Shown piece by piece: positions 6,052-10,829 of a stretch of DNA of 47,003 nt. Position numbers and translations under genes: made by a program. The notes below the pieces were generated by a model, which saw only the letters and a list, made by a program, of their open reading frames with translations, had not been told where the DNA came from and searched no databases. The stretch comes from Octopus sinensis. Its lineage: Eukaryota. The stretch lies in NCBI RefSeq assembly GCF_006345805.1, contig NW_021832160.1, forward strand, positions 1-47,003, given 5' to 3'. Every line of letters begins with the position of its first letter. The first letter of the stretch is position 1.

Positions 6052-6180
6052 ATGCCTAAATTCTTTCTGTTTACGTTGGCCCTTGTCTGCACCCTGTCAC
6101 TCGCGTGGATTGAAACTGAAGCTATGTCTGTTGGACTTCGCAAACGTTTGAACGTTATAAAGAATGTGCATGATCATCTG
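6052..6180 (+). CDS. Secreted two-EF-hand acidic protein, coding exon 1 (signal peptide, MPKFFLFTLALVCTLSLAWIETEAMSVGLRKRLNVIKNVHDHL)
   Basis: Pyrimidine tract plus AG at 6048-6049, ATG at 6052, 43 open codons with a hydrophobic N-terminal stretch ending in an AxxxxxA-type region, then GTAAGT donor at 6181 (phase 0). Missed by the ORF track. Confidence 0.85.
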
Positions 6181-6852
6181 GTAAGTTAATACATCTATTA
6201 TTAGTATTTTGTACATTAGGAAAATCGTTGGGGACCGCAGACAAAATGCCTTGAGATTTTTAGTCGTGGCTGTGTACGTTCTGCGTTCGAACTTCGCCTA
6301 GGTTTATTTTCTTTTCATTCGCCCGGGGTCGATAAATAACGTACCAGTAAAGTATTGAAGTTTATTTTATCGATGTTTCCCTCCGCCCTAATGTCTGGTA
6401 TTTTCTTATGCAAAGCCAGACGGATTAGCAGAAACGTTAGAGAATGGTGAAGTTCAAATGAAAAATTTTTGGGAGCGAAATTAAAATGAAAAACTAATCA
6501 AGAACTGGAGTCAATTACATCGACAAGCCCCTCCTCTCAAAATCTCTGTCCATGAGGGCTCAGTCTTTAGAGTATCGGACAAAATGCTTCGCGATATTTG
6601 TTCCGGGTCTTTATGTTCTAAGTTCAAATTCTGCTGAGACTAAATTTACCTCTTATCCTTCTTAAATCACGCCGGGGTCGACGTAATCAATCATTCTCAT
6701 CTCTACATTTCAGACCTTGTACCAAATTTACAGCCCTTAAGTGTATATATTGTCTTAGGTGTATATATTCTTTTCTACTCTAGGCACAAGGCCCGAAATT
6801 TTGGGGGAGGGGACCAGTCGTTTTGATCGACCCAAGTATGCAACTGGTACTT

Positions 6853-7483
6853 TGGTGGATGGGGCATCGTTTCCCATTCAAACTACTCTAGCTTTTGGAA
6901 TATCATCCTCGCTGTATGTGGCCGAGCATTATCCTGATGTAAGAACACCTTTCGTCTTGAAATCAAAGATGATCGTTTTTCTTCTAGCGCAGGTGTCGAT
7001 GAATGGTTGAATGGCCAAATCCAAGCTTCTCTGCTGATTCCTCAACAGTTACGATGGGATTTTGTTCCACCAGGGTTTGCAGGATGTCCTCGTCAAGATC
7101 TACAGATCTTCCAGGACGAGGCTGGTCTTCTAGGCTGTAGTTTCCGGCTCGGAATTTCTGGAACCACCGTTGAGACTGGCTTAGTGTCCAATCCCCATAT
7201 ACTGCATTAATATTCCTCACACTTTCTCTTGCACTGTTACCTTTATTGAAATCATAAAGCAAAATACATCCAATATACCCCTGTGTCACTTCCATTATAA
7301 CTTTGAAAAAATAACTGTTAGAATCGAACTGCACTCTTCAAAACTTGCACCACGAATAAGGACAAGGTAAAATTACTACCAGCTCTTATAACAAGTTGAT
7401 TCAGGTAGTTTATCTCCTCCCACTCCGACTTTTAGTTAGTTCATGCAAATGAAAAAAACGCTTTATTTATGGGATGACCCAAT
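6853..7483 (-). mobile_element. Internally deleted, 3'-truncated mariner (DD34D-type) transposon
   Basis: Mariner HTH region (ILLYDFNKGNSARESVRNINAVYG..QRWFQKFRAGNYSLEDQPRPGR) joined directly to HQDNARPHTA..WETMPHPP; TIR-like end TTGGGTCATCCCATAAATAAAG next to TA at about 7483. Confidence 0.9.
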
Positions 7484-7509
7484 ATATATATATATATACA
7501 CATAAGCAC

Positions 7510-7550
<41 letters not shown>

Positions 7551-8464
7551 TGTTATGAATATATATGTCTGTGTTCACCAAATATTGTTTATACTGTGTA
7601 GTAGATATTAAGATATGTAGATGATATATAATATTATGTAGATTATTTGTTAAAGTTTCGTGATGTGTTGCACACACGGAAATGACACACAGACATTTCC
7701 AGTAACATCTTAAAACTAAGTCGTCTTCTTATCTCCATTACCAATCTCCGTTCTGGTTTTGTCTCGTGTTGTTGGATTTGGAAGGAACATCTTTCGTAAT
7801 ATGACGTGACGTGCCAGCGTCTAGATCAAATAAAGTCGCAGATAAATTCTATATTGGCAGAATGTTTCCGTTTACCAAACCTGACACGACACTGAATTAT
7901 TTAGACAAGGGAGCGACGCCCTCTTCGTCTCCATCTTCGTATTTACTTTAGCTCAAATTTCATGGGATTTAGAATTCTGTAAACTTTTGTCGCTAAAGAA
8001 CCGTATTTCTTGTTTTGCTTTCTCGAAAGGTGTAAAGGTGAGATGGCCTAGCGGACACTATATTACAATTACCAATTCACAGATTGTAGGTTCAAACATT
8101 CTCTTGGCTTTTCGGTATTGATACTGTTGTTATTTAAACTTAGGCCCCAAATCTGACCTCATTTCGGTGTACTTTTTACCAAAAACAACAAATACTTCCA
8201 TTTTTTCATTTTTTTACGATAATAGACTTTATTTCAGGAAGATTTGTTTGCTGTTTCTAACAGACGAAAACACCACTTGGGGGCTCACTCCTTTGTTGGT
8301 TTCAGGGATTTAGAATTAAGATTCTCTCTCATGTTCGTCTTTGTATCTCTGAGCACATCATTGTGTTCTACACGGATATGTAATATGTATATACGTACAT
8401 CTATGAACATACATATATGCAATTTGTAACATATGCATATAAGCGTAGGCGTGGTTATGTGGGT

Positions 8465-8925
8465 AGGCGAAGGAGTGGATGTTTACTAAGAAGCTTGATT
8501 CCCAACCACATGGCTCCGGGTTCAGTTCCACCGCGTGCCGCCATAGGCAAGTGTCGTCTACAATAGCCTCTGACCAACCAAATCCTTGTGAGTGGATTTG
8601 GTAGACGGAAACTGGAAGAAGCCCGTCCTACATACATACATACATAAGTACGTACAAACATACATACATACATACATTCATACATACACATATGAGTGCA
8701 TGTGCGTGTATGTGTATGTTTGTGTGTGTGTTGGTTTGTCCCCTACCACCGTTTGACAACTGATATTGGTGAGCTTACGACCCCGAAACTCAGCGGTTCG
8801 ACAGACGGGACCGATAGAGTAAGTAGCAGGCTTATAAAGGGACTGAGGGCAGTTGATTCGACTAAAATTCTTCAAGGCTGTACTCCAGCATGGCCACAGT
8901 CTAATGACTAAAACAAATAAGCGAT
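8465..8925 (+). mobile_element. tRNA-headed SINE, family A
   Basis: A/B-box-like head (GGCTTCCGGGTTCAGTTCCA-type), internal microsatellite and conserved tail shared with 13645, 26688, 34274, 37640 and 46927. Confidence 0.8.
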
Positions 8926-8953
8926 AAAAAATAAACGACATATAAGTATATAA

Positions 8954-9001
<48 letters not shown>

Positions 9002-9198
9002 TGTGTATATATATTGAGTCGCCATGATAGATCTGTAGCCACTACACACATTTTTTTCTCTCCTTGTTTCTCTCCTTGTTTTTTCCGTGTTCCTTTCTGT
9101 AGAAGAGCGTAGGCTCGAAACATAAAAGACTTTTTCTATTCCTGAGCGTTATACTTATACACCTGTCTTCGTCTTTCGTTTTTTTTTCGTAAACTCTC

Positions 9199-9232
<34 letters not shown>

Positions 9233-9270
9233 ATATATATATATACGGCATATTATATTCCCATTTGCAG

Positions 9271-9553
9271 CAAGCATCTCGTAGTGTAAGAGAGGCGAGA
9301 AGAGAAGAAGAAGAAGAAGATGGAGAAGAGGATGAAGGAGAATACGAAGAAGAAGCTGAAATGATGTGGGGTTCAAGAGAAGATGCTGAGATGTTTCTCA
9401 GCATCTTTGACCTCAACAGAGATGGCAAACTGAGCAGAGACGAACTGTGGGGATTCTTCGAGGCATTATCCTACACCGACAAAGAAATTAACCAAATATT
9501 GGAGAAATTCTCTGCCATTGACACAAATTCAGACTCCTTCTTCTCTGTTGATG
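9271..9553 (+). CDS. Secreted two-EF-hand acidic protein, coding exon 2 (Glu/Asp tract, EF-hand loop DLNRDGKLSRDE, most of loop DTNSDSFFSVD)
   Basis: tttgcag acceptor at 9269-9270 in phase 0, matching exon 1; canonical EF-hand loop (D1,N3,D5,G6,S9,E12); GTGAG donor at 9554 (phase 1). Confidence 0.92.
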
Positions 9554-9681
9554 GTGAGTTTATCATTCACAATAGCATCCTTGCTGAATTGCTTTATTGC
9601 TTAATTGCTACATTGTAGTGTTGCCTCGTTTTATAATTGTTACATTGTCTAATAATTGCTATGTTGCGTATTGTGTACTGT

Positions 9682-9830
9682 GAAGGTGCGTGGCTTAGTG
9701 GTTAGGGTGTTGCACTCAAAATCGCAAGGTCCTGAGTTCGATTCCCGGACCGATCGACGCGTTGTGTTCTTGAGTAAAACACTTCATTCCACGTTATTCC
9801 AGTCTACTGGGCTGTGAATGGGTCACCCTG
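9682..9830 (+). mobile_element. tRNA-headed SINE head (family B-like)
   Basis: GGTGCGTGGCTTAGTGGTTAGGGTG A-box and GAGTTCGATTCCCGG B-box followed by SINE body. Confidence 0.7.
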
Positions 9831-10794
9831 TCACGGTATTGTCTTCCGATCGGCGGGAAAGTGTTGGTCCGCTAACTTTGCCAGCTGAGTGGCATCATTG
9901 GAAATCTAGAAAAAAAAAAGAAAAAGAAAAAAGAAGATGCAAAGCGCATTGTGACCAGCGATATGCAACAACATCCGATAGTCTTGTCGATCACGTGGTC
10001 ACGTGATATTGTATCCTGGCCGTAATGTATATTTGCTATATTGTATAACAGCAACATTGTGTAATTACATTTTTAATTGTTCACAGTTTACTAATTACTC
10101 ATTACTAATTACTACACATTGTATTAATAGCTACATTGTATTGGGTTGTCTGGAAAGTTCGTGCCGGTTTATACAAGCTTACCTTTCGACTTATTTTAGA
10201 ACATGGTTCAGTCCATAAAATAGGATTTGACTACACCTCCATTTAAAGCACAGTTTAAGCTATCTTTTCGTGGAAAAAGGTTTATATTCCTATATCCTAT
10301 GTTAATTCTGTAACCCTTTAAAACGGAAGATAAGAAAGTTCATTTTCGGCACTTGATGCTTAGGGAACAAAACAAAAATTGTGTATAATAGGTTAAAGAG
10401 TAAATGTGCCTATTGTCAAATGTGCCTATTGTATAATGTAGACTAGAGTCAATAAATAATAAACAATGAACAATTGGTGGTGTACAATAGGCCCAGTTTA
10501 CAATGGGTAGTGTTTAACAATAGGACAAATGTAATTATTGTACCTTGGGCAACAGAACCGGTTTACAATAAACCCAGAGTACAATAAGGTCTTGAAGAGA
10601 CGAGCTACGATGTACAATAAGATCTAGTTTCCAGCAGGTGATGCTTACAATAAGTCAATAGACACAACGGAAAATAAAACCCCATCTAGAGTATGATGAA
10701 AATAGATAATTAGATCTTGATTAAATTATCAATTATTCTGTGCAAATGTCAACTAATGTCGTTTATATTCTTATTTTTTTGTATTTTTTTTCAG

Positions 10795-10829
10795 AGCTAA
10801 TGATGGCAATGCAACTGTCGCTGCTGTAA
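10795..10829 (+). CDS. Secreted two-EF-hand acidic protein, terminal coding exon (E-LMMAMQLSLL-stop)
   Basis: Long T tract plus cag acceptor at 10793-10794. The phase-1 join G|AG gives the Glu at position 12 of EF-loop 2, followed by a helix-like LMMAMQLSLL and TAA at 10827-10829. Confidence 0.85.

What the first reader, a model, noticed from the sequence alone, without database searches (positions are those of the whole stretch)
6052..10829. Complete small gene for a secreted, probably processed acidic two-EF-hand protein
Splicing gives 148 aa: MPKFFLFTLALVCTLSLAWIETEA-MSVGLRKRLNVIKNVHDHLQASRSVREARR-EEEEEDGEEDEGEYEEEAEMMWGSREDAEMFLSIF-DLNRDGKLSRDE-LWGFFEALSYTDKEINQILEKFSAI-DTNSDSFFSVDE-LMMAMQLSLL. 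Seen: signal-like N-terminus, RKR and RR basic sites, a (GAA)n-encoded acidic tract, two EF-loops, no ER-retention C-terminus. Established: EF-hand proteins are mostly cytosolic, and small secreted ones are reported from mollusc shell matrices (Pinctada EFCBP, Ruditapes IMSP5 type). Inference: a convertase-processed extracellular Ca2+-binding protein in a shell-less cephalopod, perhaps for statolith, stylet, egg case, skin or salivary secretion. Two of three exons are invisible to the ORF track.
Basis: partly seen in the sequence, partly recalled or inferred. Interest (0 to 1): 0.72.

Follow-up and report, generated by a model that had tools for sequence, protein, structure and literature searches.

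The report
Octopus secreted two-EF-hand calcium-binding protein gene
This is a real small gene of Octopus sinensis, already in RefSeq as an uncharacterised protein, that encodes a probably secreted, very acidic calcium-binding protein found so far only in octopuses, argonauts and cuttlefish; its function is untested.

Summary
It reproduces exactly (GT-AG introns, phases 0 and 1) and is identical to RefSeq XP_029654908.1, "uncharacterized protein LOC115228473" of Octopus sinensis. The same three coding exons, with the same phases, occur in O. vulgaris, O. bimaculoides and Argonauta hians. A colinear mRNA exists in Sepia esculenta hatchlings. dN/dS is 0.1-0.3.

The product has a conserved signal-peptide-like N-terminus, a basic helix, a length-variable (GAA)n acidic tract and one canonical EF-hand pair. 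The mature part has no Cys and there is no KDEL-type end.

- An upstream non-coding exon ends at 5054, outside the given coordinates.
- The gene is already annotated.
- Luminal or secreted EF-hand proteins are well known outside shell matrices (MCFD2, CREC, nucleobindin, SPARC).

The RKR and RR sites are not conserved in Sepia, but an RxxR motif (R47, R50) is invariant, so convertase processing stays possible and unproven. An exhaustive profile search found no specific relative outside coleoid cephalopods. MCFD2 has the same architecture but is not a detectable homologue. Any biomineral, salivary or egg-case role is unsupported. This is an ordinary new member of a known kind, of modest interest.

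The parts
4861..5054 (+). Conserved promoter-proximal block and upstream, probably non-coding, exon. Its 3' end is at 5054 (donor GTAAGA at 5055); its 5' end is undetermined. It holds an in-frame ATG at 5036 in a weak context, which would add MNAVNFK.
   Evidence: The block is about 80-82% identical to O. bimaculoides and 93% to O. vulgaris, while the flanking microsatellite does not align. The alignment shows ATG and donor conserved. The older O. bimaculoides model XP_014777540.1 begins MNALNFK+MPKFF. Argonauta has an annotated upstream exon spliced to the same acceptor.
6050..6180 (+). First coding exon, with acceptor CAG at 6047-6049 and start ATG at 6052. Codons 1-24 (6052-6123) are the signal-peptide-like segment. 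Codons 25-43 begin the basic helix. RKR is at 6139-6147.
   Evidence: Start codon, frame and length are conserved in O. vulgaris, O. bimaculoides and Argonauta. The uncharged run is 17 aa in the octopods and 14 aa in Sepia, and -3/-1 sites are present.
6181..9270 (+). Intron of 3090 nt, phase 0, rich in repeats and holding a mariner remnant.
   Evidence: GT...AG boundaries. Nothing in it aligns to Argonauta at DNA level. A Mos1 HTH_48 ORF lies on the minus strand at 6984-7334.
9271..9553 (+). Second coding exon (residues 44-137 plus the first base of codon 138). Invariant RxxR at 9280-9291 (RSVR), RR at 9298-9303, acidic (GAA)n tract at 9298-9355, EF loop 1 at 9409-9444 (D90-E101), EF loop 2 starting at 9520 (D127).
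   Evidence: It is the only part that aligns to Argonauta at DNA level (75%). The genomic contig L005 of an unidentified cuttlefish-like species has the same acceptor and donor positions.
9554..10794 (+). Intron of 1241 nt, phase 1, splitting codon E138 inside EF loop 2.
   Evidence: GTGAGT...TTTCAG. The same phase is seen in O. bimaculoides, Argonauta and L005.
10795..10829 (+). Last coding segment (E138-L148 and the stop TAA). It completes EF loop 2 and the exiting helix.
   Evidence: The C-terminal AMQLSLL is identical in the three octopods; Sepia has AMEKGYL.
10830..10989 (+). 3' UTR up to the polyadenylation signal AATAAA (10984-10989).
   Evidence: The region is 88% identical to O. bimaculoides. 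The cleavage site itself is not determined.

Best explanation
LOC115228473 of Octopus sinensis is a genuine gene of at least four exons: one upstream non-coding exon and three coding exons. It is restricted, as far as the databases show, to coleoid cephalopods.

It encodes a 148-aa precursor of a small secretory-pathway calcium-binding protein. The inferred mechanism runs as follows.
1. The N-terminal hydrophobic segment acts as a cleavable signal peptide. The likely cut in octopods is after the conserved IET(E/G)A motif at residue 24.
2. The Cys-free, sequon-free, strongly acidic product (pI about 4.3) folds its C-terminal 70 residues into one calmodulin/troponin-C-type EF-hand pair. That pair binds two Ca2+ and should be permanently loaded at luminal and extracellular Ca2+ levels.
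3. Lacking a KDEL-type or membrane anchor, the protein leaves the ER. It is then either secreted or held by a partner that binds the Ca2+-loaded EF pair, as MCFD2 is held by LMAN1.
4. The basic helix (residues 27-50) and the variable poly-Glu/Asp tract form an N-terminal extension. A furin-type convertase may remove it at the invariant RxxR.

Shown here: the gene structure, its conservation, purifying selection, the EF-hand identity and the predicted fold. Inferred: signal cleavage, secretion, Ca2+ binding and processing.
For: Gene model:
- The model reproduces exactly and equals the RefSeq protein.
- Orthologous three-exon structures with identical splice phases occur in O. vulgaris, O. bimaculoides and Argonauta.
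- A Sepia esculenta poly-A RNA-seq contig is colinear across both junctions and has an in-frame stop before its ATG.

Constraint: dN/dS is 0.31 against O. bimaculoides and 0.11 against Argonauta. In the EF domain it is 0.05-0.16. Only exon sequence is alignable with Argonauta.

N-terminus: there is an uncharged run of 17 aa in the octopods and 14 aa in Sepia, after a basic n-region and followed by sites that obey the -3/-1 rule. Sepia has no Met at position 25.

EF-hands:
- Four Pfam EF-hand models score above their cut-offs.
- The loop ligands D90, N92, D94, G95, E101, D127, D131 and E138 are invariant.
- The AF2 domain model (pLDDT 80) is helix-loop-helix twice with a short beta bridge.
- Foldseek gives more than 1000 matches. 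All 50 listed are EF-hand proteins or constructs containing an EF-hand domain, at probability 0.99-1.00 and TM up to 0.73.

The mature part has no Cys and no N-glycosylation sequon, and its pI is 4.3.
Against: - No signal-peptide predictor was available, so that call rests on heuristics and conservation.
- No transcript carrying the exact octopus protein was found in the assembly collection. Only genome records carry it. Splicing in O. sinensis itself therefore rests on the RefSeq model and cross-species colinearity.
- The O. vulgaris annotation starts at M25 (124 aa).
- The full-length AF2 model is poor (pLDDT 61).
- EF loop 2 has Ser instead of Gly at position 6.
- Nothing here shows secretion, Ca2+ binding or cleavage experimentally.
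Confidence: 0.75

Rival explanations
1. It is a resident cofactor of the early secretory pathway, working like MCFD2. The Ca2+-loaded EF pair binds a membrane cargo receptor or cargo in the ER/ERGIC, and the protein is not a true extracellular product.
For: The architecture matches that described for MCFD2: signal sequence, disordered N-terminal part, one EF-hand pair, about 16 kDa, no retrieval signal, and secretion only when its partner is missing (PMC10317151). The mature cephalopod protein has no Cys and no glycosylation sequon.
Against: There is no specific sequence relation to MCFD2: hhalign probability 2%, and only the EF region aligns. MCFD2 is absent from the best 60 PDB matches. The inter-loop linker is 25 aa, against 36 aa in the human MCFD2 sequence as I recalled it. 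MCFD2 is widely conserved in animals (my own knowledge), whereas this family appears only in coleoids. Whether octopus has a separate MCFD2 orthologue was not tested.
Confidence: 0.12
2. It is a prohormone or granin-like precursor. A convertase cuts at the invariant RxxR (or at RR in octopods) and releases a conserved basic peptide of about 26 aa as the active product. The acidic Ca2+-binding part helps sorting or aggregation into dense-core granules, as in nucleobindin-2/nesfatin-1 or the chromogranins.
For: R47 and R50 are invariant in Octopus, Argonauta and Sepia. K31, L33 and K37 of the N-terminal segment are also invariant. The 25-50 peptide has pI 12 and the remainder pI 4.05. There is a precedent: NUCB precursors combine a signal peptide, dibasic sites and EF-hands (bioRxiv 10.1101/2021.11.19.469228).
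Against: The classical dibasic sites are not conserved in Sepia. The strongest constraint is on the EF domain, not the N-terminal segment: dN/dS for segment 25-54 is about 1.06 between the two Octopus species, against 0.16 for the EF domain, though the counts are small. There is no C-terminal Gly for amidation. Amphipathicity is only marginal. No peptide or sequence match was found in the literature.
Confidence: 0.12
3. It is an extracellular matrix protein of a calcified or chitinous structure (statolith, stylet, cuttlebone, egg case), as the first reader proposed by analogy with bivalve EFCBP/PFMG1-type proteins.
For: Signal-peptide-bearing EF-hand proteins are expressed in bivalve mantle and respond to shell damage (PMC3120837). 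The poly-acidic tract is a common trait of mineral-associated proteins (my own knowledge). All species that carry the gene have statoliths.
Against: No expression or proteome evidence was found. No non-cephalopod mollusc protein stands out in the exhaustive profile search. The acidic tract is short and varies in length like a slippage product.
Confidence: 0.08
4. It is a cytosolic EF-hand protein translated from Met25, as in the O. vulgaris annotation, and the hydrophobic stretch is untranslated leader.
For: CAI9737236.1 of O. vulgaris is annotated as 124 aa starting at MSVGL.
Against: In the O. vulgaris DNA, ATG1 and codons 1-24 are intact with one conservative change. The 24-codon length and the hydrophobic character are kept in Argonauta despite 50% divergence. 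Sepia has Arg, not Met, at position 25, and its mRNA has a stop just upstream of the first ATG. dN/dS of codons 1-24 is 0.15-0.35 among the octopods. RefSeq uses ATG1 in both O. sinensis and O. bimaculoides.
Confidence: 0.04

Closest known systems
MCFD2 (multiple coagulation factor deficiency protein 2), the soluble EF-hand cofactor of the LMAN1/ERGIC-53 cargo receptor
   Same: About 146-148 aa with a signal sequence, an unstructured N-terminal part, a single C-terminal EF-hand pair and no ER-retrieval signal. It is therefore secreted unless held by a partner (PMC10317151).
   Different: There is no detectable specific homology (hhalign probability 2%). The inter-loop linker is shorter. This protein has a basic helix and a poly-acidic tract that MCFD2 lacks. 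The family is seen only in coleoid cephalopods.
CREC family (reticulocalbin, calumenin, Cab45): luminal multi-EF-hand proteins
   Same: Both have a signal peptide and an acidic N-terminal region before the first EF-hand. A CREC-like marine eukaryote protein (P0090) aligns over the whole EF pair at 96% hhalign probability and 26% identity. Proteins ending in HDEL or LDEL are among the weak profile hits.
   Different: CREC proteins have 4-7 EF-hands and usually an HDEL-type end. This protein has two EF-hands and ends in QLSLL. The similarity is at the level of any EF-hand pair.
Nucleobindin-2 / nesfatin-1 precursor
   Same: Signal peptide, dibasic or convertase sites and an EF-hand pair, with an N-terminal peptide released by prohormone convertases.
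   Different: NUCBs are roughly three times larger (about 420 aa, from my own knowledge) and have leucine-zipper motifs and a DNA-binding region (my own knowledge). No NUCB structure appears among the best PDB matches. Cleavage here is only a motif-level inference.
Bivalve mantle EF-hand proteins (Pinctada EFCBP, PFMG1 and relatives)
   Same: Mollusc proteins with a signal peptide and EF-hand motifs, thought to act extracellularly (PMC3120837).
   Different: Only the cephalopod proteins and repeat proteins of several hundred to about 2200 aa score below E = 1e-10 in the exhaustive search. There is no evidence that the cephalopod protein is in any mineral matrix.
Calmodulin / troponin C lobes, polcalcins, Entamoeba CaBP (generic EF-hand pairs)
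   Same: These are the best sequence matches in the PDB (E 1e-5 to 1e-3) and the best fold matches (TM 0.6-0.73, probability 0.99-1.00).
   Different: They are cytosolic and have no signal peptide, basic helix or acidic tract. Identity is only 20-30%.

Membership tests
EF-hand superfamily (paired EF-hand domain, Pfam EF-hand_7) | Two 12-residue loops with oxygen ligands at positions 1, 3, 5, 9 and 12, and a hydrophobic residue at position 8 | tested here: met
   Loop 1 is DLNRDGKLSRDE and loop 2 is DTNSDSFFSVDE. The ligand positions are invariant in four species. EF-hand_6, EF-hand_7, EF-hand_5 and EF-hand_1 score above their curated cut-offs. Loop 2 has Ser rather than Gly at position 6.
EF-hand superfamily (paired EF-hand domain, Pfam EF-hand_7) | Helix-loop-helix twice, with the loops paired by a short beta bridge | tested here: met
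   The AF2 model of residues 72-148 has pLDDT 80.3, four helices and two 2-residue strands. All 50 Foldseek PDB matches listed are EF-hand proteins or constructs containing an EF-hand domain. This is a prediction, not a solved structure.
EF-hand superfamily (paired EF-hand domain, Pfam EF-hand_7) | Binds Ca2+ | not testable with these tools
   Needs ITC, 45Ca overlay or a Ca2+-dependent mobility shift on recombinant protein.
Classical secretory proteins (cleavable N-terminal signal peptide) | Basic n-region, hydrophobic h-region of about 7-17 residues, and a c-region with small residues at -3/-1 | tested here: inconclusive
   The heuristics are met in all four species: MPK/MSR/MK, then a 17-aa (octopods) or 14-aa (Sepia) uncharged run, then TEA|M, TGA|M or VDC|L. 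The ORF is conserved. No trained predictor (SignalP) was available.
MCFD2 family | Sequence homology to MCFD2 across the EF-hand domain and the N-terminal region | tested here: not met
MCFD2 is not among the best 60 PDB sequence matches.
MCFD2 family | Ca2+-dependent binding to LMAN1/ERGIC-53 | not testable with these tools
   Needs pull-down or co-expression experiments.
CREC family | Four to seven EF-hands and a C-terminal HDEL-like retrieval signal | tested here: not met
   There are only two EF-hands, and the C-terminus is QLSLL in octopods and EKGYL in Sepia.
SPARC/BM-40 extracellular Ca-binding (EC) domain | Match to Pfam SPARC_Ca_bdg, and a disulfide-bonded EF-hand pair | tested here: not met
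   SPARC_Ca_bdg scores 15.0 bits against a cut-off of 22. There is no Cys after the signal peptide in any orthologue.
Proprotein-convertase substrates | An R-X-(K/R)-R or RXXR site, conserved, in an accessible region | tested here: inconclusive
   R47-S-V-R50 aligns with RAVR in Argonauta and RFAR in Sepia, and both Arg are invariant. RKR and RR are not conserved outside octopods. Cleavage itself cannot be tested here.
Mollusc shell-matrix EF-hand proteins (EFCBP/PFMG1 type) | Homology to those proteins, and presence in mantle or shell-matrix proteomes | not tested
The exhaustive profile search shows no close relative outside cephalopods. No proteome data were found.

The most novel reading that the evidence does not exclude
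This would be a coleoid-specific mini-prohormone or granin. Cleavage at the invariant RxxR would free a conserved basic helical peptide of about 26 aa (residues 25-50) as a signalling or membrane-active product. Before cleavage, that peptide might dock into the hydrophobic cleft of its own Ca2+-loaded EF-hand pair through the flexible acidic tether. The result would be a self-chaperoned, Ca2+-gated peptide-delivery module that arose new in cephalopods.
Probability: 0.08. Interest if true: 0.6.

Novelty: new member of a known kind. Interest (0 to 1): 0.3.

Why it matters
Secretory-pathway EF-hand proteins are few, and each known one has a distinct role: cargo receptor cofactor, luminal Ca2+ buffer, matrix organiser or prohormone. 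A small one restricted to one lineage, conserved from octopus to cuttlefish and under purifying selection, is a tractable candidate for a cephalopod-specific extracellular or luminal Ca2+-dependent function. It is also a clean example of a taxon-restricted gene built from an old domain plus a slippage-prone acidic tract. As it stands it is an annotated but uncharacterised protein with no expression or functional data, so its immediate value is modest. The practical result is that the first-stage reader can reconstruct correct small multi-exon genes from raw sequence.

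Tried and rejected
- Full-length AF2 model: mean pLDDT 61 and pTM 0.40. The Foldseek search with it gave only meaningless matches at E > 2. It was replaced by a domain-only model.
- MCFD2 orthology: rejected, hhalign probability 2%.
- SPARC EC domain: below the Pfam cut-off, and there are no cysteines.
- Word-indexed searches with alignments: no new relatives (where the 8000-candidate limit was reached). The acid-tract-free query returned only one known protein, so absence from squids or Nautilus cannot be claimed from those searches. 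The exhaustive HMMER search is the basis for the taxon-restriction statement.
- Paralogues in the window: none by tblastn.
- Literature searches by accession, locus name and peptide strings: nothing on this protein. ERR3431203 could not be assigned to a species.
- Hydrophobic-moment test of the basic helix: only marginal (0.42-0.56; 0.5-8% of shuffles reach it), and the best window is not at the same place in all species. It was not used as evidence.
- ARAGORN on the window: no tRNA genes, so the tRNA-like intronic segments are at most SINE remnants.
- Synteny check of downstream ORFs against the fetched loci: no overlap was available.

Full report
**Observation**

I read 5800-11100 and joined 6052-6180, 9271-9553 and 10795-10829.
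- Both introns are GT-AG. The donors are CTG|gtaagt and ATG|gtgagt, the acceptors follow polypyrimidine tracts, and the phases are 0 and 1.
- AATAAA lies 155 nt after the stop (10984).
- TRF reports the period-3 AGA/GAA array at 9298-9355.
- tblastn finds no second copy in the window.

**Identity of the window and the gene**

The first homology search returned three cephalopod proteins. The cluster look-up shows a 148-aa member, XP_029654908.1 "uncharacterized protein LOC115228473 [Octopus sinensis]". It sits on a contig of 47003 bases, the length of this window. The model is therefore right, and it is already annotated, without a function.

**Comparative evidence that the model is a real coding gene**

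I fetched the loci of O. bimaculoides (L001), Argonauta hians (L002) and O. vulgaris (L003).
- All three have the same three coding exons with GT-AG boundaries at the same codon positions and phases.
- Against Argonauta, only exon 2 aligns at the DNA level (75%). The introns do not align at all.
- Nei-Gojobori dN/dS is 0.31 (O. sinensis vs O. bimaculoides) and 0.11 (vs Argonauta; dS is saturated there). The EF-hand part is lowest, at 0.05-0.16.
- An exhaustive HMMER profile search of 1.84 billion representatives found two further relatives.
  - P0004 is a 141-aa protein on a 913-nt contig of run SRR19578112. That run is poly-A RNA-seq of Sepia esculenta hatchlings.
  - P0007 is exon 2 read through into both introns, on a genomic contig of run ERR3431203. 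Its species is unknown and it is about 95% identical to Sepia.
- The Sepia mRNA is colinear with the octopus exons across both junctions, with no gap at L43|Q44 or at D137|E138. It carries an in-frame stop eight codons before its ATG.
- The genomic contig has its acceptor (ttctttcag|TTG) and donor (GATG|gtatgt) at the same positions.

This is cross-species evidence for both splice junctions. Direct junction reads from O. sinensis could not be obtained here.

Two bases before ATG 6052 there is a conserved acceptor (ttttcctccag|AA).
- In Argonauta, the annotated protein runs on upstream into an exon 5.8 kb away that is spliced to exactly this acceptor.
- In the window, a block at about 4861-5070 is conserved with O. 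bimaculoides and O. vulgaris, while the surrounding microsatellite is not. It ends in ...AACTTCA|gtaaga at 5054/5055.
- Spliced to 6050, it keeps an ATG at 5036 in frame, which would add MNAVNFK. That is the N-terminus of the superseded O. bimaculoides model XP_014777540.1.
- That ATG has a pyrimidine at -3, whereas ATG 6052 has a purine in the spliced context. Argonauta has no upstream ATG and Sepia has an upstream stop. Met1 of the 148-aa model is therefore the conserved start.
- Either start gives a signal-like N-terminus.

The gene thus has at least four exons and begins outside the reported coordinates.

**The protein**

*N-terminus.* After MPK (MSR in Argonauta, MK in Sepia) comes an uncharged run of 17 residues in the octopods and 14 in Sepia. 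Sites obeying the -3/-1 rule follow. TEA|M (TGA|M in Argonauta) after residue 24 is the one conserved in octopods.
- The segment has diverged in sequence but not in length or character. That is how signal peptides usually evolve.
- The O. vulgaris annotation that starts at Met25 (124 aa) is not supported. Its DNA has ATG1 and all 24 codons intact, and Sepia has Arg at the position of Met25.
- I had no trained signal-peptide predictor, so I rate this point as very likely, not shown.

*Basic segment (25-54).* It is predicted helical, at low confidence, and has pI 12.
- RKR is RKH in Argonauta and QKT in Sepia. RR is SK in Sepia.
- R47 and R50 are invariant (RSVR, RAVR, RFAR), which is a minimal furin-type RxxR.
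- Amphipathicity is marginal.

*Acidic tract.* Its length differs in every species, and it is encoded by a triplet repeat. Replication slippage is the likely cause of the variation.

*EF-hand pair.*
- Four Pfam EF-hand models pass their cut-offs.
- All ligand positions of both loops are invariant.
- A domain-only AF2 model (pLDDT 80.3) shows two helix-loop-helix units with a short beta bridge.
- Foldseek finds more than 1000 PDB matches. All 50 listed are EF-hand proteins or constructs containing an EF-hand domain, led by the centrin Cdc31, troponin C, calmodulin lobes, polcalcin and CHP1, with TM up to 0.73.

*Other features.* The mature chain has no Cys and no N-glycosylation sequon, and its pI is 4.3. 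The C-terminus (QLSLL; EKGYL in Sepia) is not a KDEL-type signal.

**Relatives and family placement**

Beyond the five cephalopod clusters, the exhaustive search gives only multi-repeat or generic EF-hand proteins.
- PDB sequence matches are generic: calcineurin B, Entamoeba CaBP, polcalcins and calmodulin, at E of 1e-5 or weaker.
- MCFD2 has the same architecture (signal sequence, disordered N-terminal part, one EF pair, no retrieval signal; PMC10317151). It shows no specific homology, with hhalign probability 2%.
- A CREC-like marine eukaryote protein aligns over the EF pair at 96% probability and a bacterial-type EF protein at 97%. Calmodulin reaches 29%. These figures show that the domain is an ordinary EF pair, not that it belongs to any of those families.
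- SPARC_Ca_bdg is below its cut-off, and the disulfides that define that domain are absent.
- Bivalve mantle EF-hand proteins with signal peptides exist (PMC3120837), but I could not compare their sequences.
- Nucleobindin-2/nesfatin is a precedent for a convertase-processed secretory EF-hand protein.

**Mechanism**

The best-supported reading is a small soluble protein of the secretory pathway. It is Ca2+-loaded through one EF-hand pair and lacks a retention signal. It is therefore either secreted or held by a partner.
- Shown: the gene, its conservation, the domain identity and the predicted fold.
- Inferred: signal cleavage, secretion, Ca2+ binding and RxxR processing.

I found no support for the statolith, stylet, egg-case, skin or saliva suggestions. 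Searches by accession, locus name, peptide string and topic returned nothing on this protein. The orthologue in a cuttlefish, which has a calcified shell, shows the gene is not tied to loss of the shell.

**Novelty and score**

The gene is annotated but uncharacterised, and no paper in the library mentions it. It is a new, apparently coleoid-restricted member of the known class of luminal or secreted EF-hand proteins. That is a useful candidate rather than a surprise, so I score interest at 0.3.

The taxon restriction rests. The word-indexed searches were unreliable here, so absence from squids, Nautilus or other molluscs is not proven.

Noticed in passing
window 6984-7334, minus strand (element about 6853-7369), inside the first coding intron: Remnant of a mariner/Mos1-type transposase. 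A 116-aa ORF matches Pfam HTH_48 (E 3.8e-13). The same insertion is present in the O. bimaculoides intron at 89% identity, so it predates the split of the two species.
   Followed up: partly
window about 8440-8560 and about 9685-9760 (introns): Segments that look like tRNA-derived SINE heads (for example ...GGTTCGATTCCCGGA...). ARAGORN calls no tRNA anywhere in the window.
   Followed up: partly
window 5060-5335 and 5565-5923 (within the intron between the upstream exon and the ATG exon): The intron between the upstream exon and the ATG exon consists largely of (ATAT)n, (AT)n, (TACA)n and (TG)n microsatellites. It is about 1 kb here and only about 250 nt in O. bimaculoides.
   Followed up: partly
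L003 (O. vulgaris OX597833.1) 9929-10057: The O. vulgaris annotation of the orthologue (CAI9737236.1, 124 aa) starts at Met25, although the upstream ATG and 24 codons are intact (T8S only). It looks like an annotation truncation.
   Followed up: yes
window 32924-34144, minus strand: A 406-aa ORF, low-complexity and rich in Gly, Asn, Arg and Ser, with no Pfam match. It could be a large exon of a neighbouring gene.
   Followed up: no
window 46081-46500, minus strand; L002 30564-30877: A 139-aa ORF with no Pfam match. In Argonauta, the gene downstream on the minus strand is an 1178-aa FAM234A/B-type beta-propeller protein. Whether this ORF is an exon of its orthologue was not established.
   Followed up: partly
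window 16993-17442 and 17552-17896, minus strand: Two ORFs (149 and 114 aa) whose sequences look to me like DDE-transposase fragments of the Tc1/mariner type. There was no Pfam hit at E < 0.01.
   Followed up: partly
window 39263-40334, both strands: A long stretch of extremely simple sequence that gives poly-Ile, poly-Thr, poly-Asp, poly-Gly and poly-Pro ORFs in several frames, with strong GC skew at 40001-42000. It is most likely a satellite or low-complexity repeat, not coding sequence.
   Followed up: no
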